From Podarcis melisellensis (lineage: Eukaryota): a stretch of DNA of 64,000 bases. Numbering within the stretch: position 1 is the first letter of the stretch; each line of letters opens with the position of its first letter. Shown here in pieces: positions 95-62,013 of this stretch. The DNA is taken from assembly GCA_964234715.1 (NCBI GenBank), contig OZ174278.1; one strand, given 5' to 3'. The translations under genes were made by a program, and so were the position numbers. Under the pieces are notes generated by a model. That model ran no database searches. It was not told the origin of the DNA and was given only the letters and a program-made list of their open reading frames with translations.

Positions 95-445
95 CAGTGG
101 TGCCCCGCAAGACGAATGCCTCGCAAGACGAAAAACCCGCTAGACGAAAGGGTCTTCCGTTTTGGAGGCGCTTCGCAAAACGAATTCCCCTATGGGGTTG
201 CTTCGCAAGACGAAAAAAATCTTGCATCCCCCCGCGGGTTTTTTCCGCTTTTTTCGCCCTTAAGCCGCTAAGCCGCTTATCAGCTGTTCCGCTGATAAGC
301 CGCTTAACAGCTGATCGCTGGAAGCCGCTTGACAGCTGTAGCGCTAATCCGCTAAGCTGTCAATGGGCTTGCTTCGCAAGACGAAAAAACCACTATACGA
401 AGAGCCTCACGGAACGGATTAATTTCGTCTTGCGAGGCACCACTG
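95..445. mobile_element. Non-autonomous Tigger/pogo-like (Tc1/mariner) element, short member of the CAGTGGTGCC-CGCAAGACGA family
   Basis: TIR CAGTGGTGCCCCGCAAGACGAA / TTCGTCTTGCGAGGCACCACTG; TA on both sides; repeated subterminal CGCAAGACGA. Confidence 0.88.
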
Positions 446-12089: not shown

Positions 12090-13475
12090 TTAGTTTTCAA
12101 AGGCCTGTCTGACTTAGGAAGTTCTTAGCCTCATATCTCCACCAAATGTGCCTCTGATGTTGCTGAGAACAAGACAAGGGCTTCATCTGAGGATCTTAGT
12201 GCCCAGACAGGTTTGCATAGGGAGATAAGATCTTTCAGATGGACCCAAGCCATATAAGGCTTTATAGGTCATTATCAGCATTTGAATTGTGCCCAAAAAA
12301 GGACTGGCAGCCAGTGAAGTTGGTTTAACAGGGGACTAATATGCTACCTGTAACTTGGACCAGCTGAAGTTTCCAAACACTTTTGAAAGGTAGCCCTATG
12401 CAGAGTGTGTTGCATCAGTTCAGCCAGACTGTAACTAAGGCATGCTTCACCGTGGCCAGATCAGATATCTCAGGGAATGGGTGTGTGATCCATAATTGTG
12501 CAAATGCATTCCTGGTCACCACTGAAATATGGGCATCCAGGTTCAGGGCTGAACCCAACCAAACTGCAAGTTTGAGACTTCAAGTGGAGTGTAACTCCAC
12601 TGAACACAGATTGAATCCCTGTTCTCTCATCTGCCTTGCAACTGAGCTGGAACACATCTGTCCCTACCTGAGATGATGATGATGATTTTATTATAGATTT
12701 CCTTAGTTTACAAAAGTATGTGCATTGTTGTATACAGAATAAAGTTGGGGAAGAAGAAGGGGGGCGAGGAGTGGTAAACTTATATTCTTATACTTAGGGT
12801 GTATGTGGGGTTTTTATGTCAGCGTCATTTCGGTAGGTTCTCTTTCTGTTTGTTTTTTATATTTCCTTGGTAGTGAGAGAGGTTGGGTGTGGGACCCAGG
12901 GTGTGATTGATTGTGTTTAGTTGGCTGCAATGAGGTTTGTTTGTGTGTGAAAGCTGGGGGGGGGGGGTGTTGTTGGGTCAAGTTAGCTAGATTGATTCAC
13001 ATGCTGTCGTGTCCCTACCTGAGTTAAACTTATCCAGTCCATTACTGAGATCACATACTGATTTAGAACAGAGTTGTGTGTCATCAGCATACTGATGGCA
13101 TCATACCCCACAATTCTGTATGACCTCTCCCAGTGGTCTCATGTATTTGTTCAATAGCATGGAGGACAAGATGGAGTCCTGAAGTATCCCACATGTCAAC
13201 AGCCATGGAGTCGACCAGGAGTCCCCAGCACTACCTTCAGAACTTGTACCTTCAAGTCCTTACTAGTGCCACTGTTAAACAGTGCCCCTAAGTTTCATCC
13301 CTGACAGCGATCCAGAAGGATGCTATTGGGAGGTCCAACAGAACCAACAGGGGCACACACACCCTTGCCCAGTTTCTGGTGTAGATCATTCACCAAGATG
13401 ATCAAAGCAGTCTCTGTTCCATAACTGGGCCTAAAGCCAGATTGAGATGGATCTAGATAATCTGGTTTATCCGTT
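12090..13475 (-). mobile_element. Degraded L2-like LINE, interrupted at 12673-13009
   Basis: Minus-strand peptide YLDPSQSGFRPSYGTETALIILVNDL (L2/CR1 RT) and further decayed RT-like text; boundaries approximate. Confidence 0.65.
12673..13009 (-). mobile_element. 337-bp retroposed insert (probably a LINE 3' UTR) with (CAT)n tail
   Basis: TSD TGTCCCTACCTGAG at 12659-12672 and 13010-13023; (ATG)n then tttatt (antisense AATAAA) at left end. Confidence 0.75.
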
Positions 13476-13531
13476 TCATTTTGTATGCTGAGTACATGCA
13501 TAAAAATCCTTTCTCAGCTGCTGCTAATAAG

Positions 13532-13664
13532 TGGATGCTTGCAGTTTCACATGGTGTCTCCTTTCTGTGGTGACAACTGTGCAGAAGCATCCCAGAGTAA
13601 CATTGAAGCTATCTGTTCATCCCTGGATAGTTAACAGGGTTGGATCGTTCCACTTCTGACATAT
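13532..13664 (+). ncRNA. SCARNA23: Intronic box H/ACA scaRNA, SCARNA23 (ACA12) orthologue; guide for U6 snRNA pseudouridine 40
   Basis: Hairpin 1 closed by GGATGCTT/AAGCATCC; H box AGAGTA (13594-13599); hairpin 2; ACA (13659-13661) plus 3 nt. Pocket strands TCTG (13612-15) and TCGTTCCA (13645-52) are complementary to U6 5'-UGGAACGA-U40-A-CAGA; 14 nt from pocket to ACA. SCARNA23 is hosted in POLA1 in mammals. Confidence 0.9.
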
Positions 13665-13938
13665 CTGCACCATAGACTGGTGATGAAGTGTAGTGTTTTG
13701 AAATAATGCAAGTGTTTTTCAGACCTGAATGCTGACAGAATCACATGGACACACATTGATTTCATAATAAACCAGAGTACTTTTGAAGGAATCTGACTTT
13801 AAATGTCCCCCTCACCAATGACTCTTCACTCGCGTTCTGGTGTTCTTTTACACTGTACTGCAAGTAACTTGTCTCTCACTGTCTCCATAGTAGGTATATA
13901 TTGTAATGTGACTTTTGTGTGTGTATTTTTAATTTCAG

Positions 13939-14063
13939 GTTTTTATGACAAGTTCATCTTGCTCCTCGACTTCAATAGCTTATACCCTTCAATTATCCAA
14001 GAGTTTAACATCTGTTTTACAACAGTTACCAGGGTGTCTTCAAGTGTGCCAAAAAAGACAGAG
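13939..14063 (+). CDS. POLA1: POLA1 exon (~24): [29 protein letters not shown]...KKTE (motif A)
   Basis: ttcag/gtgtgt; 125 nt; DFNSLYPS catalytic motif A. Confidence 0.97.
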
Positions 14064-15501
14064 GTGTGTGTTTAATTTGACAGGAGCTTTTAATGTTTAA
14101 TTGTTAAAAAAGATCTTATGTTTATATTCAAGAATACATTGAAGTCTCCTTAGACATTGCGGCTGTATTTAGTAATTGTAGTGTATTGCATGATACCATG
14201 TTTAATAGTATATTTCATTATAAATTGTGTATAATCGCATGAAATCAGATTGGTTCCACCTTGACATGGAGTTCATTATATCTTCCTTTTTAGCAGCTGC
14301 ATAATATTTTTGTGACATTAAAAAGTGTACATGGACCCTCCTTGTTTTCTTACATGCTTAGCTTATTCCCCATTTTTCCATGTAAAACCGGATCAGTCTT
14401 GCTTGCTGAAACATTTTTTCTACACCCTGTCCTTGTAAAGTTCATTAAATATGTATATAAACTATTTTTTTACATGATTTATCTGCCTATATGCCTATGA
14501 GATGGCAACGATGGCATTGTATCATCCAAGTATTGTTCAGCAGAACTGTTGCAGACAAGGAAGGCTTTGATCTTTTTTGCTATGTGTTCAAAGTGGTTTT
14601 GTATGCTTCTCAGGTGGTATCCAATCTGGGTAACTAGGTTGCAGAACCAGGCTTATCTTAGAATCTGCAGCAGAACAGAGTTAAATGCCTTCAGAACATT
14701 CTTTGGCCAGCCCAGGATAGTGCAGTTGAACCTTACACTCTACTTTGAAGTTTTCACTAGATATTTTGTCAATACCATTTATTTTCTTTATCTGTTTATT
14801 TAGTCATTAAATTTGTGTCCTGTTTTTTCTCCCAAAGGAGAAAAAGTCAAAGGAGTGTACTCAACTTCTGCTAGTCCAATAAAAACAAATCCACATTTTT
14901 TGTGTTAATGGTTACCTGTCTAAAGTTACTTGGGCCACTTTCAGCCTCTGGTCCTCATGCGTGCTTATGGTTTCCTTGCGGCACCAAGATCCTGTGTCCA
15001 TTTAGGTTCCTTTCAGCTCATAGATGGGGCATGCGAACCGGAAGAGACTAGCAGTTTTAGGTTTGAACCAGGAGTTTGTCCTTGGTTGGGTGTGAAATGC
15101 CATCTTTCCCCAAGGGGGTGGTGATTAGGCCCTAAATCACAAAAACACCTTTTGGGTTATTTATATGCCAGTTTTTCACATTCCCTTCTTGGGGAAAGTA
15201 GGTGTCATCTCCCGAATGAGACAATTTGGGCACAAGACAGAGACCCAGCATTAACAGCTGCCAGAGGAGATCTTCTTCTGTGGATCACCTGGGGGAATCC
15301 CTCCAGAGAGTAGCTATCGCTCTGAATGCCGATGGTTCTGGAAGGAATGGTTATCTGACCTAGTTGGGATGTCTTCTCCATTAGGGTCTTTTGAGATATA
15401 ACCCAGTGGCATATCCTTGTTCATATGACAGGGTGGAAGCAGCAATTTCAGGAATTAGGTTATTCTGGTAGTATTAACTTGTCAAACTAATAACTTCACA
15501 G

Positions 15502-15648
15502 GATGGAGAAGAAGAAATTCCAGAATTGCCAGATTCATCGCTAGAAATGGGAATCTTGCCTAAAGAGATCAGGAAGTTAGTTGAACGAAGGCGTCAAGTG
15601 AAACAGTTGATGAAACAGCCAGACTTAAATTCTGACCTCTACTTACAG
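15502..15648 (+). CDS. POLA1: POLA1 exon (~25): [49 protein letters not shown]
   Basis: cacag/gtatct; 147 nt. Confidence 0.96.
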
Positions 15649-16116
15649 GTATCTCTAACAGAATGAAAATGTCCATTGTTGAGAAACTAGACCAAGATTC
15701 TGCTTGTTTGTATACTTATCTTCTCCAAGGCTAATCTTTAAATGTAAGAAATGAGTATATAGGGCAAATTTTTTTTGCTGCTATTTCTAATTTTCTGCTA
15801 GGCTAGTCTATCTTGCTTCTTATAGAAGGGGCTAAAATGAGCAGCTAGATAAAATTTGCCAGTGCAGTTAACAGGACAGGCACCCATCCCCCTTACATGC
15901 ATGCCACTCGCGGATGACTGCATTTAAATGGGTCACTGCTAAATAAGTAAGTAGATTGGACTTCAGTCGACCAGGAGCACTGGGCGGGAAGTCCCTTCTC
16001 CCCACTTCTGCCATTTCACTGGCTCACCTGGAGCCTTTGCCCCTCTACCAGATGGCCACTCGGCATTTTAACATCTCTCTTATAAGTGACTGGGTACATA
16101 TGATTATATTTATATA

Positions 16117-18135
16117 CAGTGGTGCCTCGCAAGACGAAATTAATTCGTTCCGCAAGTCTCTTCGTCTTGCGGTTTTTTCGTCTTGCGATGCACGGTTTCC
16201 CATAGGAATGCATTGAAAATCAATTAATGCGTTCCTAGGGAAACCGCCTTCAGACCAGGTCCGGGGACAGTCTGTCCCCCGACCTCTTCTGAAGGCTGGG
16301 GGGGGGGGACAAGGGCTTTTCTTCCCACTGCCAGCCTTCAGAAGGCTGTTCTGAAGGCTGGCGGTGGGAAGAAAAGCCCTTCTTCCCACCTCCCGCCCCG
16401 CAAGCTCCGGGGACAGGAGGGCTTTGCTGCCGACCGCCAGCATTTTAAAAGCCCCTGCTGTCCCGGGGCGATTTTAAAATGCTGGCGGGCGGGAGCGAAG
16501 TCTCCGCTGCCCCGAGGAGATTTTAAAATGCTGGGGGTCGGCAGCGAACGCTTCGCTCCCGCCCGCCAGCATTTTAAGATCGCCCGGGGCAGCGGAGAAG
16601 TCTCCGCTGTCCCGGGAAGGCAGGCGGGGGGAGCAAAGACTTTTGCCCCCGCCTGCCTTCAGAAGAGGTCCAGGACCTCGTTCCGATGCCCGGCGGCAGG
16701 GTGCGAGGTTCCCGCCCCACCGCCCGGCATCGGGGCATCGTTCCGATGCCGGGCGGCGGGGGGAGAGGTTCCCGCCCCACCGCCCGGCATCGGGGCATCG
16801 TTCCGATGCCGGGCGGCGGGGGGAGAGGTTCCCGCCCCACCGCCCGGCATCGGGGCATCGTTCCGATGCCCGACGGCGGGGGGAGAGGTTCCCGCCCCAC
16901 CGCCCGGCATCGGGGCATCGTTCCGATGCCGGGCGGCGGGGGGAGAGGTTCCCGCCCCACCGCCCGGCATCGGGGCATCGTTCCGATGCCGGGCGGCGGG
17001 GGGAGAGGTTCCCGCCCCACCGCCCGGCATCGGGGCATCGTTCCGATGCCGGGCGGCGGGGGGAGAGGTTCCCGCCCCACCGCCCGGCATCGGGGCATCG
17101 TTCCGATGCCGGGCGGCGGGGGGAGAGGTTCCCGCCCCACCGCCCGGCATCGGGGCATCGTTCCGATGCCGGGCGGCGGGGGGAGAGGTTCCCGCCCCAC
17201 CGCCCGGCATCGGGGCATCGTTCCGATGCCGGGCGGCGGGGGGAGAGGTTCCCGCCCCACCGCCCGGCATCGGGGCATCGTTCCGATGCCGGGCGGCGGG
17301 GGGAGAGGTTCCCGCCCCACCGCCCGGCATCGGGGCATCGTTCCTATGCCGGGCGGCGGGGGGAGAGGTTCCCGCCCCCCCCCGCCCCGCTTCGGAGCAG
17401 CGTTCCGAAGCGGGGCGGCTGGGGCAGGTGTTCCCGCCCCCCCGCCCCGCTTCGGAGCAGCGTTCCGAAGCCGGGCGGTGGGGGCAGGTGTTCCCGCCCC
17501 CCCGCCCCGCTTCGGAGCAGCGTTCCGAAGCGGGGCGGCTGGGGCAGGTGTTCCCGCCCCCCCGCCCCGCTTCGGAGCAGCGTTCCGAAGCCGGGCGGTG
17601 GGGGCAGGTGTTCCCTCCCCCCCGCCCGGCTTCGGAGCACCGGGAGAAACGATCTCCCCGCAGCCCCTTGCTTCAAAAGAGGTCCGGGGGCAGCGGGGAA
17701 GAAGCGCTGCGCTTCCCGCTGCCCCCGGACCTCTTTTGAAGCAAGGGGCTGCGGGGAGATCGCTTTTCCCCGCAAACCCTTGCTTCAAAAGAGGTCCGGG
17801 GGCAGCGCGAAGCGCTTCCCGCTGTCCCCGGACCTCTTTTGAAGCAAGGGGCGGTGGGGAGAAGCGATCTCCCCACAGCCCCTTGCTTCAAAAGAGGTCC
17901 GGGGGCAGCGGGAAGCGCTTCCCGCTGTCCCCGGACCTGGGGCTGCGGGGAGAAGATCGCTTCTCCCTGCTGCCCCTTGCTTCAAAAGAGAAGACCCGCT
18001 GTCCCCTGGGCAAGCTTCGTTTTGCGAAGCAAGCCCATAGGGAAATTCGTCTTGCGAGGCAACTCGAAAACGAAAAAACCTTTCGTTTTGCGAGTTTTTC
18101 GTCTCGCGAGGCGTTCGTCTTGCGGGGTACCACTG
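16117..18135. mobile_element. 2.0-kb non-autonomous Tigger/pogo-like element carrying GC-rich palindromic arrays
   Basis: TIR CAGTGGTGCCTCGCAAGACGAA ... TTCGTCTTGCGGGGTACCACTG; TA flanks; no transposase ORF. Confidence 0.9.
16677..17640. repeat. 60-bp GC/CpG-rich minisatellite (~11.5 near-identical units plus ~4 variant units)
   Basis: Unit TTCCGATGCCGGGCGGCGGGGGGAGAGGTTCCCGCCCCACCGCCCGGCATCGGGGCATCG repeats with exact 60-nt period 16681-17341. Confidence 0.97.
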
Positions 18136-18142
18136 TATTTAA

Positions 18143-18328
<186 letters not shown>

Positions 18329-25592: not shown

Positions 25593-28500
25593 TAAGAGCT
25601 TGTACAGATTTTGTAAAAGGACAGATCACCATGTCCATGTCCATGTTTTATGATGGTTGAAGGGACTGCAGATTTTCACTTCAGTTTGTTGTCTTACTGG
25701 GAAAATGGTCTTTGCCAGCGGCTGGCAAACATTGGCTCTTTCTCTCCTGCTACGGTTACTGTTGGTTTCTCACTACTGTGGTAACAGTTGCCTTGTACAC
25801 TACCTTAGAGGTGTGTTTGCTGCTACCTGTTCGGTAGCATATGTAGTAAGGAGACCATGGAGAGCAGTAGATGATACAGTACCTCTTGGCTGCTTAAAGC
25901 AATTCATTCTGGCTGTGGGAATTTTATGGGGTGAAGAGGGCACAGGCAGAATAAAGGGAAACAACCAAGAGTAGAAGCAGCAGCTGCTAAGAGCCTGAAG
26001 CTGGGAATTCTGCCAGCTCCTGGTTCTGTTCGCAGTGGGCAATAATTGTTGAACAAGTTCCTAGTCCCGATGGGACTCAAATGCCCAGCACTACACAACA
26101 CAATTAATTACAATTATTATTTTTAACAACAGTTGTGGTGATGGAGTTGAGCCGTGGATGAAGCGTGTAAAACAAATGGTATAATGCTGTTGGAATGGCA
26201 TCTTATCTGTACTGGTTTTATGTGTACTTAAAGGTTACAAGTTTCATGAACTTGCAGCACTAAATTATGTCTTCTGGTATACAATTTCATGTTTGTGATG
26301 GAGCAGAGAAATTCCACTTGAATTCCAAGTCTCTTCCTGTAGCACAGAGCAGTGTCTGGTCGCTGAATTTTTATTGTGACTAGCTACTCCAGTGTTAACT
26401 GCAGCACTAATTTCTAAACCCTTCAGGGGGGAATGTAGTGCACTTACAACATGAGGACGAGGCAGTGATTTTTAAGAAAAGTATATTGGCTAAAACCAAA
26501 CTGATTTTTATGAACAAGCTACAACAAGTTTTAGCTATTGCATCCCAATATTCATTCATTCCCCTGAGGCTTTATGTAGACTATTACATGCTTATGGCCA
26601 GTGTAGTAGTTTGTGTTGCTCCTAGGTTAACAATTTTTCAGTTCTGCAGAAAGCCATGGGCCTTTTGATGGTTGTTCATATTTTGCACATACATCCTATG
26701 ACTTCACACCTGTGCAACCTAAATGAATGTAACATTGCAGTCTTTGTGTTTATTTCAAGCAAATATCATTACATTCTGGCCGAAAAGAAACAGAAATACG
26801 CAACCCAAAAATGGCTACAATTACTTGACTCAATTCAGAGTAAAAACAACAAAGCGTTCTGGAACTTAGTGTATGGAGGATTGAAAGCCGAAAATCAACT
26901 AACTCTACCACCAATTGCAGAATCCAAATGGTCCCAATACTTTACATCTGTATTTAACAATCTACATAGTGAACTTAAAGGAAATGAAACCACTAAAAAT
27001 AAAATTATTAAACTCCAGGAGTGGCCAAGGGTAGAGGAAGAGGAAATTAGAGAGATAGTAAAAAATTTCAAATCGGGGAAATCTCCTGGGCCAGACGGTC
27101 TACCAATAGAATTATTTAAGACCTATATAGATTGGTGGGCAGAACCCTTAGCCCAACTGTTTACGCTTATAGATAAATATGGGATCATACCTGAGATATG
27201 GCTAAGATCAATAATTATTCCAATCTTTAAAAATGGCGACCCAAAAGAACCAAGGAATTATAGACCGATAAGCCTTCTATCAGTGATAGGGAAAATCTAC
27301 GCTAAGCACCTCTTATCTAAACTCCTTACCTGGATGAAAAATCTAAATTTACCAGGGAAAGAACAAATAGGTTTCTCCAAAGGTTGCTCTACACTAGACC
27401 ACTGTCTTATTCTTATGCATCTGGTTGAAAAATACAGATCCCAAAGGCAATCTAAGATATACGCTGCTTTTGTAGACTTTCGTGGTGCATTCGACTCAAT
27501 TGACCGCCCAAAGTTGTGGAGGAAACTCGCAGAATTAAAAATTGATCAGCGCCTATTGATCCTAATCCAAAATCTACACTCTTCCAATACCTGTCAAGTC
27601 AAACTTAACATCAAAGGTCACCTTTCATCAGACATCCCAATCTCGAAAGGGGTAAAACAAGGGTGCATTCTTGCCCCCTTTCTATTTAATTTATTTTTAT
27701 CAGACTTGCCAGATTACCTTCAGAAAATAGAATCACATGCCCCTAAACTTAATCAGAAACCAGTTCCTCTCTTACTATACGCAGACGATGCTGTCCTACT
27801 ATCCTTAACGAGCTTGGGTCTAAAACGTCTTATATCTTCACTGATCCTCTATTGCGAATGTAACAAACTCTCTATAAACTATGAGAAGACAAAAATTTTG
27901 GTCTTCTCGAATGGTTGGAAATTAGAGAAATGGAAAATAAGAGGGCAAGAAATCCAACAAGTGAAAATCTATAGGTATCTGGGAATCTTATTCCAGAGCA
28001 ATTTAGGGTGGGCAACCCATCGCACAAATGCCATAAAACAGGCAAAGTGCATCTCATCAGCAGTTGCCCGTTTTCATTATCAGAAAGGTAATCAATTTAT
28101 TCCTGCGGCAAATCAGATATTTCAAACAAAAGTGCAATCCCAGATATTCTATGGAATCCCGCTATGGGTCCAAGCATATAACAATGATTTAAAAAAGATT
28201 CACTCTAGCTTTCTGAGACGTATTCTTGGACTCCCAGCTATGATCAAATATGAAACAATGTGTGCAGAAATAGGCATACACACAATGGAATATTGGGCAT
28301 GGTCCACCTCAATAAAGTATTGGTTACGCTGCCACTTCCGCTGCCCTCCATCAAGTCTGCTCGCTGATTTGCTCAAAGACTCCTATAAATCAAGATGGTA
28401 TCAGCACCTCGAAAAAAAGATTGAATCTTTAGGTGTCGAGCTGGAGTCCCTGTACAATTCTAATGAGCAATATATTTCCCATAATATCCTAACTAGACTA

Positions 28501-28970
28501 AAGGATGTCGAGAGACAAAATATTATGGCAGCTGTAAACAAAATTTGCTCCCCCATATTCTATGAATTAAATATCTTAGATAGCAGAGCCAATTACGTCA
28601 CTAAACTAATAATCCCAGCCCAACGTAGGGCTTTTATGCTGGCCCGCTTGAATGTTTTTCCCTCAGCATTTGTCAGGGGAAGATATCAAAACATTCCTAG
28701 AAACAAGAGACTCTGCAGATGCTCTATGAATGTCCCGGACACTGTAGAGCATATTCTCCTTCATTGCCCATTGTACAGTACGCTCCGTCAACGCGTGCTG
28801 TCCCCTCTTTTGGGTGGTCTGGAACCGCAGCAAGGTGAATGTGTGGGATTCTACCTATCCGACGTTGACCAAAGGGTAACGGCGGGGGTAGCCGAGTTTT
28901 TGGCAGCAGTCCTCCAAGGAGCAGGTTAACAAGGAAAACCACTGACTCTATATGTATATATATATATGTA

Positions 28971-30661
28971 CAGTGGTGCCCCGCTAGACGAATGCCTCGC
29001 AAGACGAAAAACCCGCAAGACGAAAGGGTTTTTCGGTTTTTGCGACGCTTCGCTAGACGATTTTCCCTATGGGCTTGCATCGCAAGACGAAAGCCCATAG
29101 GGAAATCTCGGGGACCTTTTTTTAAATGCTGGCGGTGGGGAGCAAAGCCTTCCCCCCCCTCCGGACTTCAGAAGAGGTCCAGGAAGGCCGGCGGGGGCGA
29201 AAGGCTTTGCTCCCCACCGCCAGCATTTTAAAAGCGGTCCGGGATAGCAGGGAAGCGCTTCCCGCTATCCCGGACGGCTTTTGAAGGCAGGCAGGGGGGG
29301 CAAAGACTTTTGCCCCCCCTGCCTGCCTAACCGGGGGCTTTTAAATCGCCCCGGGACTGTCCGGGGCGATTTAAAAGCCCCCGGACGGCTTTTGAAGCCT
29401 CCCCCCCGCCCGGCTTCGGGGCATCATCCCGATGCCGGGCGGTGGGGCAGGAACGCCTCCCCCAGCCGCCCGGCATCGGGGCATCGTCCCGATCCCGGGC
29501 GGTGGGGCAGGAACGCCTCCCCCCCCGCCCGGCTTCGGGGCATCGTCCCGATGCCGGGCGGTGGGGCAGGAACGCCTCCCCCAGCCGCCCGGCATCGGAA
29601 CGATGTCCCGAAGCCGGGCGGCCGGGCGGGAAAGCCTCCCCCCCCGCCCGGCTTCGGGGCATCGTCCCGATGCCGGGCGGTGGGGCAGGAACGCCTCCCC
29701 CAGCCGCCCGGCTTCGGGGCATCGTCCCGATGCCGGGCGGTGGGGCAGGAACGCCTCCCCCAGCCGCCCGGCATCGGAACGATGTCCCGAAGCCGGGCGG
29801 CCGGGCGGGAAAGCCTCCCCCCCCGCCCGGCTTCGGGGCATCGTCCCGATGCCGGGCGGTGGGGCAGGAACGCCTCCCCCAGCCGCCCGGCTTCGGGGCA
29901 TCGTCCCGATGCCGGGCGGTGGGGCAGGAACGCCTCCCCCAGCCGCCCGGCTTCGGGGCATCGTCCCGATGCCGGGCGGTGGGGCAGGAAAGCCTCCCCC
30001 AGCCGCCCGGCATCGGAACGATGTCCCGAAGCCGGGCGGCCGGGCGGGAAAGCCTCCCCCCCCCCGCCCGGCATCGGGGCATCGTCCCGATGCCGGGCGG
30101 TGGGGCAGGAATGCCTCCCCCAGCCGCCCGGCATCGGAACGATGTCCCGAAGCCGGGCGGCCGGGCGGGAAAGCCTCCCCCCCCCGCCCGGCTTCGGGGC
30201 ATCGTCCCGATGCCGGGCGGTGGGGCAGGAAAGCCTCCCCCAGCCGCCCGGCATCGGGGCATCGTCCCGATGCCGGGCGGTGGGGCAGGAACGCCTCCCC
30301 CAGCCGCCCGGCATCGGGGCATCGTCCCGATCCCGGGCGGTGGGGCAGGAAAGCCTCCCCCAGCCGCCCGGCATCGGAACGATGTCCCGAAGCCGGGCGG
30401 CCGGGCGGGAAAGCCTTTGTCCCCCCTGCCTGCCTTCCCAGGGGCTTTTAAATCGCCCCGGACAGCGGAGAAGTCCTCCGCTGTCCCGGGCGATTTTAAA
30501 ATGCCGCCCGCCAGAAGAGGTCGGGGGAAGGCTTTTTCCATAGGAACGCATTAATTGATTTTCAATGCATTCCTATGGAAAACCGTGAATCGCAAGACGA
30601 AAAACTCGCAAGACGAAGAGACTTGCGGAACGAATTAATTTCGTCTTGCGAGGCACCACTG
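28971..30661. mobile_element. 1.7-kb Tigger/pogo-like element (same family as 16117-18135, inverted), nested in LINE 3' UTR
   Basis: CAGTGGTGCCCCGCTAGACGAA ... TTCGTCTTGCGAGGCACCACTG; TA flanks; last ~120 bp are a near-perfect reverse complement of 16117-16237. Confidence 0.92.
29400..30415. repeat. ~60-bp GC-rich palindromic minisatellite with several interspersed unit types
   Basis: CCGCCCGGCWTCGG-loop-CCGAWGCCGGGCGG units with period ~56-62 nt. Confidence 0.95.
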
Positions 30662-33600
30662 TACTTAGCAAACTGCTGCCTTTTTATATATATTTCAAGG
30701 CTTTTATATGTTATTTTCTCTTTTAAGGTTTTATTTCCATAATGCCTAATAAAGGTTTGATAAAGTAAGTAAGTTTATTTCAAGCATTTTGCCTGTCACC
30801 ACAGTTCAAGAGGAAAATCTGCACATGGGGAACAGAAGTTTAGTATGCTAATAAATTCTTTGCTCGGGAATGACAGCAATGTTGATGGCTGCAGTGTAAC
30901 AATGACATACTGGTCCTGGAATGTTGAAATGATCAAAGTAACCTTAGCATGTCTTTGTGCACATATCTCTATGTTATACACCAGTTGTTGGCATGAAAGT
31001 CATTTCTTCCATGCTATTGAATAAATGGCCTAGATCAAAGTTTACCACGGTGCTCTCTCATTTCCAGTTACTTTAAGATCGGTTGTGATAGAATGGCTAG
31101 AATGTTGGGACAGGATGTGAAAAGCCCAGATCACCACTTGGCTATGACGTTCACACAATAGATATGACGTTTGGCAAATCGTTCTAAATTAAGTGTGAAT
31201 AAAGAATGCATAAAATGTAAATAAATGTATAAAATATAAATAAAAGAATGAATAGAAATGAGAGACATGAAAATGGAAAAATAAGGGAGCATGGTGGAAT
31301 TCACAAACAGAACTCTGCAAATGCTCATTCTACTTGTTCGGTGGCCTTGTTCACACATTGTTGTAAGTCATGGTTAATGGCTCTTTCACTGCTCTCCTAG
31401 AAGGAAATGAGCCACAATCCTTCACTGAGCATTTGTTCTTAACCAGAGAGAATGGTTTCTTTTACTCCAAACAAACCATGATCTTAAGCTAAGGACTGGG
31501 GTTTGTTGTTTACACTAGTGGAGAAGTTTCACGCTATTGGAGAAGTGAAGAGGGAGCAATCTAGTCATTCACAGAAGCTGTCAGCCGTGACTTAGGATGA
31601 GAAGCGAGCCTGCCTAATAAAGTTACCATTAAAATTAAATGAATACTATCATTATAAAGATCTAGGTAGTGGCCCCTCATTTCATGTATTGCAAAGAAAA
31701 TGTATGCAAGCATTATATGCATTTATATATTTTATTTGAGGCTTATTGATGTTGTTGCAGTTTCATGTATAGCTTGACAAAGAGGGATGTGACCCATTAG
31801 TCTTGTTAATGTGTTTTTGTAGGAGGCATCTGAGGAATTCTGCTATGAGTATTGTATTTCTTTGTAGCCACAATAAGCGTCCTCTGTTGAATAGTATCAC
31901 TTTTCATGTCGGTCTTTAGAGCATGTGAAAGCATCTTCAAAACTCGTTTTAAAGTGATCTGCAAGTACTAAGTGAATTTTATTCAGAACTTTTGAGTGAT
32001 AAAAAGCAGAAGTTTTCTTTATTTGAATTTTGAGCTAGGGTGTTAATCCTTCTCTGGTTATTTTCCCTTTTCATTTTTTATCATTAGTTGCTTTGTTGTG
32101 ACGAGTGTTTCAGAGTTAGTAATAGTTGCATGTAGCGAGAAGCAGAGTGAACAAGCTGAAATTCTAACAGCTTGTTCCTTGAGTGAGTTTATATAATGGT
32201 GTAAAAAACGACACTTCATGCTAGTTTTAACTACAGTTGGTATGAAACGAAGCAAACTTTCATTTATCTCTGTGTGTTTACCGATATGAAAGCAAGAAGG
32301 TCTTCAGGTTAGAGTGATGGACCAAAGAGGCAGCATGATTTGAGCCTTCACCTGCTGCTTCCAAATATCAAATTCAGTTTTCATCTGCAGGTCTAGCTGA
32401 GAAAACATGGCTAGTCCAAGGTCAACTAATAAGCTTCATGGCTGAATGAGGGATTTGAACTTGGCTCTCTCCCAGATTGGTTCTGTCTCAGGCAATGGTG
32501 CCAGCTTGGGGATGGGGCTCTAGCTGAACTAGGGTCCTCGGCTGGGCACAGAGTCCAGGGCCAACGAATCACATTCCACTAGAACTAGTTCCAGATCCAG
32601 GAAGCACTCAATGGTCGAACAAAGCTCAGGTTCCAATGAGGCAAGTTCAGACAAAGCAGAAGTAAAGTCCGAAAGGCAAACAAGCTATGCTGAATAGTTC
32701 CAAGTGGCGTTTGGGAAGGCTACGTGCCACTTGGAACTGTTCGGTGCTCCAACAATGAACAAACCCAGCCCGAGCCTTCCTTTCCTCACTCCTGATGATG
32801 AGGGAAGCCTCTACTCTTAAAGGGGCCAGCCCGTTTTCAGAGCTGTGGAGTCCAGTGGTGCAGGGGAGGCCATGGTTCTGTTATGGCCTCTCAGCTGGAG
32901 TCCTTTGAGTCTAATGACAGTAATGCAACCTCTTGAAGCCAGAGAGGTGCTGGCATCACAGACTCCTGTGATGCTACAGCTTCTGAGAGGGCATGCCTGT
33001 CAACGGCTGACTCATAGGCTACATTCTCCTCCCAGTCAGATATATTTTCTAACTTCCTGAACTCTTTCCCTGAGGATGAGGAGACAGAGGGCTGAGTCAT
33101 GTACTTCTGCTTTTGTACCAAGTTCATTGGCTTCCAATTCAAAATGTGCAGTTCAACGTTGAAGAGCACAATATGTTAAGGATTGCCTCCGCCAATATGG
33201 TCCTGCTTGCCTCCTGCAATCTGCAGAAGAGGGTCTTTGTGCTTTATCACTAGATGAAATAATTAATTATCAAGCTATGAGGATACAGCACCTTGTGAAT
33301 TTACTTTTTGCTTTTGATCGCTTGTTTAGAATGGCACTAGAAACCTATAAAAGTATTACCAGTCAATCTAGTATTCAAGGCCATTTCAGATAAATTGAAA
33401 AGGGTGTGTGTATTCTGGAGAATACACTTTAGCATTGTGGCATTCCGCCCACCCTCTTGGTTTAAATAAGATTTTGTATTCACCTGCTGTCAGGGACTGG
33501 CAGGATGCTGACAATTGTGCATTGGGAGAAGCAGGGCTAGAGTCTGACTTGGCAAAGAGGGCCAGTGGTTTATGGGGACCTGTGCTAGCCAGGAGACCAG

Positions 33601-41622: not shown

Positions 41623-41924
41623 NNNNNNNNNNNNNNNNNNNNNNNNNNNNNNNNNNNNNNNNNNNNNNNNNNNNNNNNNNNNNNNNNNNNNNNNNNNNNN
41701 NNNNNNNNNNNNNNNNNNNNNNNNNNNNNNNNNNNNNNNNNNNNNNNNNNNNNNNNNNNNNNNNNNNNNNNNNNNNNNNNNNNNNNNNNNNNNNNNNNNN
41801 NNNNNNNNNNNNNNNNNNNNNNNNNNNNNNNNNNNNNNNNNNNNNNNNNNNNNNNNNNNNNNNNNNNNNNNNNNNNNNNNNNNNNNNNNNNNNNNNNNNN
41901 NNNNNNNNNNNNNNNNNNNNNNNN
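41623..41924. other. N-run, 302 nt
   Basis: Direct reading. Confidence 1.
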
Positions 41925-45250: not shown

Positions 45251-45690
45251 AAAACGTGTTTACAAAGCACGGATCCACATGGATCCTCAGGATTTTTGCA
45301 CTAGGTCACCCCAAATTCACCATCAGATCACATAGCATATCCATGGCTACAGCCTGCACCAAAAAACACCCACACCCACTGTTTCATGGGGCCGCAAAGG
45401 TGCAAAAACGTGGTTACAAAGCATGGATCCACATGGATCCTCAGGATTTTTGCACTAGGTCACCCCAAATTCACCATCAGATCACATAGCATATCCATGG
45501 CTACAGCCTGCACCAAAAAACACACGCACCCACTGTTTCATGGGGCCGCAATGGTGCAAAAACGTGGTTACAAAGCATGGATCCACATGGATCCTCAAGA
45601 TTTTTGCATTGGGCTACCCCAAACTCACCGTCAGATCACATGTCTGTGGCCACAGCATGAACCACAAAAATCATACATCCACTGTTTCGT
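45251..45690. repeat. 154-bp tandem repeat, ~2.8 copies
   Basis: aaaacgtg..ggatccacatggatcctc at 45251, 45405, 45559. Confidence 0.92.
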
Positions 45691-61594: not shown

Positions 61595-62013
61595 NNNNNN
61601 NNNNNNNNNNNNNNNNNNNNNNNNNNNNNNNNNNNNNNNNNNNNNNNNNNNNNNNNNNNNNNNNNNNNNNNNNNNNNNNNNNNNNNNNNNNNNNNNNNNN
61701 NNNNNNNNNNNNNNNNNNNNNNNNNNNNNNNNNNNNNNNNNNNNNNNNNNNNNNNNNNNNNNNNNNNNNNNNNNNNNNNNNNNNNNNNNNNNNNNNNNNN
61801 NNNNNNNNNNNNNNNNNNNNNNNNNNNNNNNNNNNNNNNNNNNNNNNNNNNNNNNNNNNNNNNNNNNNNNNNNNNNNNNNNNNNNNNNNNNNNNNNNNNN
61901 NNNNNNNNNNNNNNNNNNNNNNNNNNNNNNNNNNNNNNNNNNNNNNNNNNNNNNNNNNNNNNNNNNNNNNNNNNNNNNNNNNNNNNNNNNNNNNNNNNNN
62001 NNNNNNNNNNNNN
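61595..62013. other. N-run, 419 nt
   Basis: Direct reading. Confidence 1.

What the first reader, a model, noticed from the sequence alone, without database searches (positions are those of the whole stretch)
16117..18135. Tigger-like transposon family that carries expandable palindromic GC-rich minisatellites
Seen: three copies (95-445, 16117-18135, 28971-30661) share TIRs and subterminal CGCAAGACGA repeats but range from 0.35 to 2.0 kb. All have hairpin-built interiors. Each 60-bp unit contains CCGATGCCGGGCGG and its exact reverse complement CCGCCCGGCATCGG, so the array is a chain of alternating inverted arms. A third module (17650-17990) has ~70-80-nt near-perfect hairpins. CpGs are undecayed and G-runs are dense. 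Inference: a young non-autonomous family that disperses CpG-island-like, cruciform/G4-prone VNTRs into AT-rich introns; possibly undescribed.
Basis: partly seen in the sequence, partly recalled or inferred. Interest (0 to 1): 0.7.

Follow-up and report, generated by a model that had tools for sequence, protein, structure and literature searches.

The report
Lizard MITE family carrying hairpin minisatellites
Three copies of a very abundant, non-coding cut-and-paste jumping gene of wall-lizard-type genomes sit in introns of the DNA polymerase alpha gene, and two of them carry long CpG-rich arrays of a 60-base hairpin repeat; this is a well-documented example of a known kind of element (repeat-carrying miniature transposons), not a new system.

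Summary
Three TA-flanked elements (95-445, 16117-18135 inverted, 28971-30661) share a 22-bp terminal inverted repeat. They also share a ~123-bp left end with five CGCAAGACGA motifs and a ~76-bp right end.

Two copies have interiors made almost entirely of GC-rich palindromes, plus homologous 60-bp arrays of 16 and 17 units. CpG o/e is 0.92-1.28 against 0.28 in the rest of the window.

Raw reads from two related lizards put the family at about 10^4 copies per genome. About three quarters are short, like copy 1; only some 5-25% carry the hairpin modules. Insertions lie at TA in AT-rich DNA.

A related species appears to have an empty site at 16116, and nine array units are identical, so copy 2 is young. 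Array length differs among copies: 0, about 5 (in a Podarcis muralis ARHGAP20 gene model), 16 and 17. Units occur in two flipped states.

The G4 claim is weak. The Tigger assignment, polymorphism at a single locus and methylation could not be tested.

Closest known are tandem-repeat-containing MITEs (clam DTC84, Xenopus miDNA4). This scan has already noted the same kind of element elsewhere in this genome. My verdict is a new member of a known kind, of moderate-to-low interest.

The parts
95..445 (+). Copy 1: short (351 bp) family member, flanked by TA at 93-94 and 446-447. Left end 95-~216, interior with 27-bp AAGCCGCT-type repeats 270-338, right end ~370-445.
   Evidence: Loose-end consensus shows this interior type is the majority of the family.
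16117..18135 (-). Copy 2: 2019-bp member, inverted relative to copies 1 and 3, flanked by TA at 16115-16116 and 18136-18137.
16117..16251 (-). Right-type end of copy 2. It comprises the TIR, two further CGCAAGACGA motifs and the CCATAGGAA...TTCCTAGGG palindrome. The first 76 bp are common to the whole family.
16246..16677. Chain of GC-rich palindromic modules (arms 25-50 nt, 82-90% complementary).
   Evidence: DNA fold -192 kcal/mol, z -19.6.
16678..17384 (.). 60-bp array, main subarray of about 11.8 units; 9 units are 100% identical. All inner 21-mers are in the 'flipped' state in element orientation.
17385..17639 (.). Second 60-bp subarray (~4.2 units, CCGAAGC-type) with a 120-bp two-variant alternation.
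17642..17990 (.). 103-bp period module made of two alternating near-perfect palindromes (2.2 copies). A single copy of the same palindrome occurs in copy 3 at ~29227-29285.
   Evidence: Fold z -25.4.
18013..18135 (-). Left-type end of copy 2: TIR plus five CGCAAGACGA-like motifs, three of them at 16-bp spacing.
28971..30661 (+). Copy 3: 1691-bp member, flanked by TA at 28969-28970 and 30662-30663. It sits in the AT-rich tail 42 bp after a LINE reverse-transcriptase ORF.
29395..30416 (.). 60-bp array of copy 3: 17 units, 12 in one state and 5 in the reverse-complement state, in the pattern A3B-A2B-A3B-A1B-A3B with a 179-bp higher-order period.
29096..29394 (.). Hairpin modules of copy 3 on the left side (arms 20-58 nt, 88-100% complementary).
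   Evidence: Fold z -18.7.
30417..30582 (.). Hairpin modules of copy 3 on the right side, collinear with 16199-16664 of copy 2 (reverse complement).
18179..18301 (+). Host exon of the DNA polymerase alpha catalytic subunit (POLA1, residues ~943-983). The end of copy 2 lies 43 nt upstream of its 3' splice site.
   Evidence: Pfam DNA_pol_B E 1.8e-16; PDB POLA1 chains E ~1e-20; sequence.

Best explanation
These are three independent insertions of one very abundant non-autonomous DNA transposon family of lacertid lizards. The family belongs to the Tc1/mariner superfamily and is plausibly pogo/Tigger-type. All three lie in introns of POLA1.

**Shown**
- The mobile 'shell' is a 22-bp TIR plus ~123 bp on the left and ~76 bp on the right, studded with CGCAAGACGA motifs.
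- It inserts at TA in AT-rich DNA and is present at about 10^4 copies.
- Most copies are ~350-bp MITEs like copy 1.
- A minority lineage carries a patchwork of GC-rich palindromic modules. Within it, a 60-bp unit made of two alternating inverted arms sits at a homologous position in copies 2 and 3.
- Arrays differ in unit number and unit type among copies. They contain two reverse-complement ('flip/flop') states of the inner hairpin.

**Inferred**
- The motifs are binding sites for a transposase supplied in trans.
- The palindromes arose and were shuffled by fold-back or template-switch synthesis during gap repair or replication.
- The arrays grow, shrink and homogenise by slippage or unequal exchange at the hairpins. 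Flipped variants spread by duplication of multi-unit blocks rather than by repeated flipping.
- The cargo is a passenger by-product, not a device. CpGs are intact because the copies are young, or possibly unmethylated.
For: **Shell and target**
- TIR and motif statistics. TA flanks with unrelated flanking DNA. End alignments.
- No Pfam domain in any internal ORF. No transposase in the window; the only large ORFs are LINE reverse transcriptases.

**Copy number and family structure**
- In raw WGS reads of organism A, single-copy flank depth is about 1.5x, against ~16,900 at the terminus and ~13,200 at 16160-16212. Organism E gives ~18,300 at the terminus.
- Depth falls to ~3,400 at 16213-16265 and to ~500-2,200 over the hairpin modules.
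- Loose ends at 16192-16196 (4.0k + 2.7k reads) carry the copy-1-type interior.
- Loose ends before 16113-16115 are AT-rich with 0.31-0.34 agreement, which means thousands of different flanks, all joined at TA.

**Youth of copy 2**
- The organism B contig matches the flank with 1 mismatch in 1034 and enters the TIR.
- The organism D contig (32 mismatches in 831) stops matching exactly at 16116 yet continues for 1194 more letters. That indicates a probable empty site.
- Nine units are identical.

**Common origin of the arrays**
- They are 82-84% identical in the same element orientation and have collinear flanking modules.

**Flip states**
- The reverse complement of the A state differs from the B state at 2 of 21 positions, against 7 of 21 for the direct comparison.
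- The copy 2 unit differs from the reverse complement of the A' state at 1 of 21 positions.
- All five B units in copy 3 are identical and are followed by the same variant loop.

**Another copy elsewhere**
- A copy with about 5 units is translated into the C-terminal ~200 residues of the Podarcis muralis ARHGAP20 model A0A670HXA1. That tail ends at the TIR.

**Precedent**
- Arrays of variable length inside MITEs, with palindromes as hotspots, are described in PMC3879986. Xenopus miDNA4 and Xstir are described in PMC12628747 and PMC9659126.
Against: - No autonomous partner or transposase was examined, so both trans-mobilisation and the pogo/Tigger assignment are inferences.
- The empty site in organism D is inferred from where a contig's match ends. 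The contig's own letters beyond 16116 were not seen.
Unit counts therefore rest on the assembly, and polymorphism at a single locus is unproven.
- CpG retention at o/e ~0.9-1.3 could reflect protection from methylation (a function-like property) rather than youth alone.
- Earlier notes of this scan, unchecked here, say similar palindromic arrays ride in hAT and other shells. That would point to a host-level process rather than one specific to this family.
Confidence: 0.85

Rival explanations
1. The CpG-rich hairpin arrays are functional cargo. They would act as dispersed unmethylated CpG-island-like elements (promoter, insulator, replication or recombination signals) that are retained by selection, and the MITE would be their vehicle.
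For: CpG o/e is 0.92-1.28 against 0.28 background, and GC is 69% over 1.7-2.0 kb. Hairpin-module depth relative to TIR depth is about 1.7-fold higher in organism E than in organism A. A copy is incorporated into a P. muralis gene model.
Against: About 75% of the family lacks the cargo. Unit number, unit type and module order all differ freely between copies. Identical units and a probable empty orthologous site show that youth alone can explain the intact CpGs. No methylation, chromatin or expression data were available.
Confidence: 0.07
2. The shell is a Tc1/mariner-superfamily MITE but not of the pogo/Tigger lineage. It might, for example, be a Tc1-like element with repeated subterminal binding sites. 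In that case the reader's 'Tigger-like' label is wrong while everything else stands.
For: Only the TA target, the CAGT terminus and the 22-bp TIR are shown, and these are shared across the superfamily. Repeated subterminal motifs at 16-bp spacing also occur in Tc1-type IR/DR ends (my own knowledge).
Against: From memory, not tested: Tigger1 and plant Lemi1/Emigrant ends share the CAG-N6-CCTC layout seen here. Tigger1 also follows its terminus with a duplicated ~15-bp motif.
Confidence: 0.3
3. The array is a pre-existing host or other-transposon minisatellite that the MITE captured, as proposed for Xenopus miDNA4. It would not be a repeat born inside the element from its own hairpin modules.
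For: The capture model is described in PMC12628747. Earlier scan notes (s1-508132, s1-501860, unchecked) report similar palindromic arrays in unrelated shells.
Against: In this window every match to the interior modules and arrays lies inside the three elements. The array sits at the same position next to the same GGCAGGC...GCCTGCC palindrome in both copies, and its last unit grades into that palindrome. The 103-bp module is single in copy 3 and amplified in copy 2, which shows in-element tandemisation.
Confidence: 0.2
4. The array lengths, with nine identical units, are an assembly artefact of a collapsed or over-expanded repeat.
For: The arrays were not checked with reads. Short-read contigs break inside the element (table 8).
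Against: Two independent copies have similar unit numbers but different, internally ordered variant patterns. A third copy in another assembly has a short array in register with the same end.
Confidence: 0.05

Closest known systems
Tandem-repeat-containing MITEs of bivalves (DTC84 of Donax trunculus; pearl/CvA-type elements), PMC3879986
   Same: Both have conserved terminal 'cassettes' with short inverted repeats around a central array whose copy number varies between copies. Both have ordered unit variants, a palindrome in each unit proposed as the hotspot for length change, and high copy number.
   Different: DTC84 has an AA target, up to five core repeats and a microsatellite. Here the target is TA, the TIR is Tc1/mariner-type, arrays reach 16-17 units of 60 bp, the unit is itself two inverted arms with flip/flop states, and the rest of the interior is also palindromic and CpG-rich.
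Xenopus tropicalis miDNA4 (Tc1/mariner MITE carrying a satellite) and Xenopus Xstir/Xmix, as summarised in PMC12628747 and PMC9659126
   Same: This is a vertebrate Tc1/mariner-superfamily MITE whose internal satellite occurs as one or many monomers. Arrays are homogenised within copies, and the MITE disperses the repeat.
   Different: The unit sequence is unrelated. The frog repeat is described as flanked by AT-rich microhomologies. Nothing in what I read reports GC-rich hairpin chains or flipped unit states. The original paper was not in the library and was not read.
Foldback elements (for example Drosophila Tetris or Galileo; listed in PMC9659126)
   Same: The interior is rich in inverted repeats, with tandem subrepeats that can seed satellites.
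   Different: Foldback elements have long TIRs built of subrepeats that make up most of the element. Here the TIR is only 22 bp, and no long-range inverted symmetry exists beyond local palindromes.
pogo/Tigger DNA transposons and their MITEs (human MER2/Tigger, plant Emigrant/Lemi1)
   Same: They share the TA target, the short CAG... TIR and repeated subterminal motifs. The detailed resemblance is recalled from memory only.
   Different: No transposase or autonomous copy with these ends was available, so membership is untested.

Membership tests
Tc1/mariner superfamily (including pogo) | TA target-site duplication | tested here: met
   TA flanks both ends of all three copies, while the third flanking base differs. 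In raw reads, more than 8,000 alignments per run begin exactly at the TA, with heterogeneous AT-rich DNA before it.
Tc1/mariner superfamily (including pogo) | Short terminal inverted repeats beginning CAGT/CAG | tested here: met
   A 22-bp TIR, 91-95% identical between the ends of each copy.
Tc1/mariner superfamily (including pogo) | Mobilised by a DDE/D transposase of that superfamily | not testable with these tools
   No transposase lies in the window.
pogo/Tigger | Ends matching an autonomous element that encodes CENP-B-like HTH domains plus a pogo-type DDD catalytic domain | not testable with these tools
MITE / non-autonomous DNA transposon | No coding capacity | tested here: met
   The long ORFs through the arrays and through copy 1 have no Pfam match. 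They are open only because the sequence is GC-rich and periodic.
MITE / non-autonomous DNA transposon | High copy number with conserved ends | tested here: met
   Depth is about 13,000-17,000 at the end, against ~1.5 in single-copy flank, in organism A. Depth at the end is similar in organism E.
MITE / non-autonomous DNA transposon | Small size (usually under 800 bp) | tested here: inconclusive
   Copy 1 (351 bp) and the majority type fit. Copies 2 and 3 (2019 and 1691 bp) exceed the usual size because of their cargo.
Tandem-repeat-containing MITEs (DTC84 / miDNA4 kind) | Central tandem array between conserved TIR-bearing cassettes, with unit number varying among copies | tested here: met
   Unit counts are 0, about 5, 16 and 17 in four copies with the same ends. 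The arrays are homologous and lie at the same position.
Tandem-repeat-containing MITEs (DTC84 / miDNA4 kind) | Length polymorphism of the array at a given locus | not tested
It needs long reads across 16117-18135 and 28971-30661.
Foldback elements | Long, subrepeat-built TIRs forming most of the element | tested here: not met
   The terminal inverted match is 22 bp. There is no long-range inverted pair in copy 2 and only one 45-bp pair in copy 3.

The most novel reading that the evidence does not exclude
The hairpin chains and flip/flop 60-bp arrays are not mere debris. They would be the signature of a specific, recurrent palindrome-building process in lacertid genomes: fold-back priming or template switching during repair of transposon excision gaps. 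That process would act on several transposon superfamilies and seed hundreds to thousands of methylation-resistant, cruciform-forming CpG islands near exons, one of them 43 nt from a POLA1 splice site. It would have measurable effects on chromatin, replication or splicing.
Probability: 0.12. Interest if true: 0.6.

Novelty: new member of a known kind. Interest (0 to 1): 0.33.

Why it matters
The family shows, in an amniote, how a cut-and-paste transposon at about 10^4 copies can spread CpG-island-like, hairpin-forming minisatellites into gene introns, within tens of bases of splice sites of an essential gene. It offers a clean system, with many young copies and ordered unit variants in flip/flop states, for studying how palindromic tandem repeats are born and turn over. 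It also matters for annotation: the arrays are open in all six frames, and one copy has already been translated into a UniProt gene model (ARHGAP20 of Podarcis muralis). It does not reveal a new kind of mobile element.

Tried and rejected
1. **Exact-pattern scans for the TIR.** The scan of metagenome contigs gave 0 hits. A degenerate version gave 7 metagenome and 3 bacterial-genome loci, all single chance hits without the subterminal motif. This led nowhere.
2. **Full-text search for the TIR and its complement.** No paper contains them. A 10-mer search returned only unrelated primers. Searches for lacertid or Podarcis literature on such elements found nothing specific.
3. **Transposase partner in the window.** None was found. 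The two large ORFs are LINE reverse transcriptases.
4. **Rfam scan.** Nothing matches in the elements.
6. **A second protein search restricted to the end-encoded peptide.** It returned the same single hit.
7. **Foldback-element reading.** Rejected, because the TIR is only 22 bp.
8. **G4-prone reading.** Downgraded: 7 canonical motifs in copy 2 and 0 in copy 3.
9. **Laying reads on the arrays.** I worked beside them, on 15100-16677.

The N runs at 41623-41924 and 61595-62013 were left alone.
Full report
**1.

The sequence at the three stated places shows elements bounded by CAGTGGTGCCYCGCAAGACGA and its reverse complement.
- There are six matches with 0-1 mismatch, exactly at 95, 445, 16117, 18135, 28971 and 30661; none are expected in shuffles.
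- The 10-mer CGCAAGACGA (up to 1 mismatch) occurs 23 times, all inside the three elements, against 0.8 expected.
- Each element is flanked by TA on both sides, and the flanks are otherwise unrelated, so these are three separate insertions.

Copy 2 is inverted relative to copies 1 and 3.
- Once it is reverse-complemented, a left end of about 123 bp aligns in all three. This end carries five motif copies, three of them at 16-bp spacing. A right end of about 76 bp also aligns in all three.
- Copies 2 and 3 share 135 bp at 95% on the right and 121 bp at 86% on the left.
- The true terminal inverted repeat is only 22 bp.
- The left end has CCCCG and the right end has CCTCG in all three copies, so that difference is a family feature, not decay.

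**2. Interiors.**

Tandem Repeats Finder gives two 60-bp arrays.
- 16678-17639 has 16 units at 96% matches.
- 29395-30416 has 17 units at 87%, with a 179-bp higher-order period.

Outside the arrays the interiors of copies 2 and 3 are chains of palindromes.
- Arms are 20-58 nt at 82-100% complementarity.
- The 103-bp-period module at 17642-17938 has arms of 56-120 nt at 88-96%.

Folded as single-stranded DNA, these stretches beat every shuffle.
- The interiors give z = -19.6, -25.4 and -18.7.
- Three array units give z = -8.4.
- The interior of copy 1 is much weaker at z = -5.0.

CpG o/e is 1.28, 0.92 and 0.93 in the three copies against 0.28 in the rest of the window. GC is 69% against 40%.

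The G4 part of the claim is weak. G and C runs are dense on both strands, but canonical four-run motifs number 7 in copy 2 and none in copy 3.

**3. Anatomy of the arrays.**

I cut the arrays at the anchors CCGCCCGG and CCGGGCGG. Every unit is: arm, 21-nt inner segment, inverted arm, ~23-nt loop.

The inner 21-mer exists in two states that are reverse complements of each other.
- In copy 3, state B differs from the reverse complement of state A at 2 of 21 positions, but from A itself at 7 of 21.
- Copy 3 reads A3B-A2B-A3B-A1B-A3B.
- All five B units are identical and are followed by the same variant loop. That fits one flip spread by duplication of multi-unit blocks, in line with the 179-bp period.

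Copy 2's main subarray, in element orientation, is entirely in the flipped state.
- It is 1 mismatch from the reverse complement of A'.
- It shares the GGAAC variant with copy 3's B units, so the flip predates the split of the two copies' lineages.
- Nine of its units are 100% identical.
- A second subarray of about 4 units alternates two variants with a 120-bp period.

The two arrays have a common origin.
- They are 82-84% identical in the same element orientation, against 78-80% in the opposite orientation.
- They lie at the same place relative to collinear flanking modules.
- By contrast, the 103-bp module is amplified in copy 2 but single in copy 3.

Nothing outside the three elements in the window matches any interior module.

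**4. The family, from reads.**

The stretch is held by runs of five coded organisms in at least seven studies. I laid 15100-16677, which is flank plus the element up to the array; the array itself was left out because the tool turns away long repeats. I used two raw WGS runs and two contig sets.

*Copy number in organism A.*
- The single-copy flank has a mean depth of about 1.5.
- The terminal bin has ~16,900 and the next bin ~13,200, which indicates on the order of 10^4 copies.
- Organism E gives ~18,300 at the terminus.

*Depth inward.*
- It falls to ~3,400 at 16213-16265, ~2,200 at 16266-16318, ~500-1,050 at 16319-16530, and ~1,100 next to the array.
- The module-to-terminus ratio is about 1.7-fold higher in organism E.

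*Where copies diverge.*
- Thousands of reads leave the alignment at 16192-16196 into a consensus that is the reverse complement of copy 1's interior. A third interior type is also seen.
- So roughly three quarters of the family are short copy-1-like MITEs, and the hairpin and array cargo belongs to a minority lineage.

*Target.* Reads entering from the left begin at the TA, and the DNA before it is AT-rich and heterogeneous (agreement 0.31-0.34). That means many AT-rich TA targets.

*Module shuffling.* 'Opposite strand', 'skip' and 'go back' joints at the palindromes show that modules are inverted, deleted and duplicated among copies.

**5. Age of copy 2.**

A contig of organism B matches the flank with 1 mismatch in 1034 and runs 17 nt into the TIR. 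Organism B is therefore probably the source species, with the insertion present.

A contig of organism D matches the flank at about 96% and stops matching exactly at 16116, yet has 1194 further letters. The simplest reading is an empty site, which would make the insertion younger than that split. I did not see those letters, so this is an inference.

Identical array units and intact CpGs agree with youth.

**6. Another copy elsewhere.**

I translated the ORF that runs through the array and the end and searched the protein collection. It found one protein, the Podarcis muralis ARHGAP20 model A0A670HXA1.
- Its C-terminal ~200 residues are a translated copy of this element.
- That tail contains about five 20-residue array units, then the 103-bp-module region, then the left-type end. 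It finishes at the TIR-encoded ...VLRGTTV.
- This places the family in Podarcis and gives a fourth array length (0, about 5, 16, 17).
- It also shows that these frame-open arrays contaminate gene models or are exonised.

**7. Context.**

The exon at 18179-18301 encodes residues ~943-983 of the DNA polymerase alpha catalytic subunit.
- Copy 2 ends 43 nt upstream of that exon's 3' splice site.
- Copy 1 starts 32 nt after what looks like a splice donor at 61.
- Copy 3 sits in the AT-rich tail just after a LINE reverse-transcriptase ORF.
- None of the internal ORFs has a Pfam domain.

**8. What it is and how it works.**

*Shown.* This is a TA-targeting, short-TIR, non-coding family of about 10^4 copies, with conserved ends and variable cargo. 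That makes it a non-autonomous Tc1/mariner-superfamily element.

*Inferred.*
- The repeated CGCAAGACGA motifs are transposase-binding sites used in trans.
- The palindromic modules arise and are shuffled by fold-back or template-switch synthesis during repair or replication.
- The arrays change length by slippage or unequal exchange at hairpins, with block duplication spreading variants.

It could not be tested.

**9. Comparison and novelty.**

Arrays of variable length inside MITEs, with a palindrome per unit as the presumed hotspot, are described for clam DTC84 (PMC3879986). A Tc1/mariner MITE carrying a variable satellite is known in Xenopus (miDNA4), as is Xstir (PMC12628747, PMC9659126).

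This family has the defining features of that kind that I could test. What stands out is the all-palindrome, CpG-island-like interior and the flip/flop unit states.

No paper in the library contains the TIR. Repbase and Dfam could not be searched.

Earlier notes of this scan describe the same kind of element at other places in this genome, so the scan has found this before on other DNA.

My verdict is a new member of a known kind, with interest about 0.33.

Noticed in passing
window:13532-13664 (+): Rfam SCARNA24 (RF00422) matches at 90.9 bits, full length, E 3.5e-13. It is a small Cajal-body RNA gene in a POLA1 intron, on the same strand as the host exon.
   Followed up: no
window:9271-11904 (+) and 26656-28929 (+): Two long open reading frames (877 and 757 aa) have reverse-transcriptase domains (RVT_1, E 1e-36 and 5e-32). 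They are LINE-type retrotransposons with largely open ORF2. Copy 3 of the MITE is inserted 42 bp after the second ORF, in its (TA)n-rich tail.
   Followed up: partly
P0001 (UniRef A0A670HXA1_PODMU), residues ~520-720: The Podarcis muralis ARHGAP20 gene model ends in about 200 residues that are a translated copy of this transposon (array units, palindrome module, end and TIR). This is either a mis-annotated or an exonised terminal exon.
   Followed up: partly
window:18136-18179 and 61-94: Copy 2 ends only 43 nt upstream of the 3' splice site of an essential POLA1 exon. Copy 1 begins 32 nt after an apparent splice donor. A 2-kb GC-rich hairpin-laden insertion so close to the branch-point region is evidently tolerated.
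   Followed up: no
window:651-672 (+): There is a single CAGTTGTACCTTGGTTGGTGAA terminus preceded by TA. It looks like the end of a different Tc1/mariner-type element. No inverted partner lies within 3 mismatches in the window.
   Followed up: partly
window:44543-44859 and 45251-45641: There are two further tandem repeats. One has a 119-bp unit x2.7 containing (TG)n(AG)n runs. The other has a 154-bp unit x2.5 at 94%. Neither is related to the finding.
   Followed up: no
window:15100-15788: Raw reads of organism E give zero depth across this ~690-bp flank, although they cover 15789-16053 and the transposon at full depth. The stretch is probably absent or strongly diverged in that species.
   Followed up: no
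window:16196 (loose ends): A third interior type of the family departs at 16196. Its consensus begins GTCGGGAAAGTTTTGG, with agreement 0.95-0.96, in about 1,700-1,900 reads per run. It is represented by none of the three copies in the window and could be another subfamily or the autonomous element.
   Followed up: no
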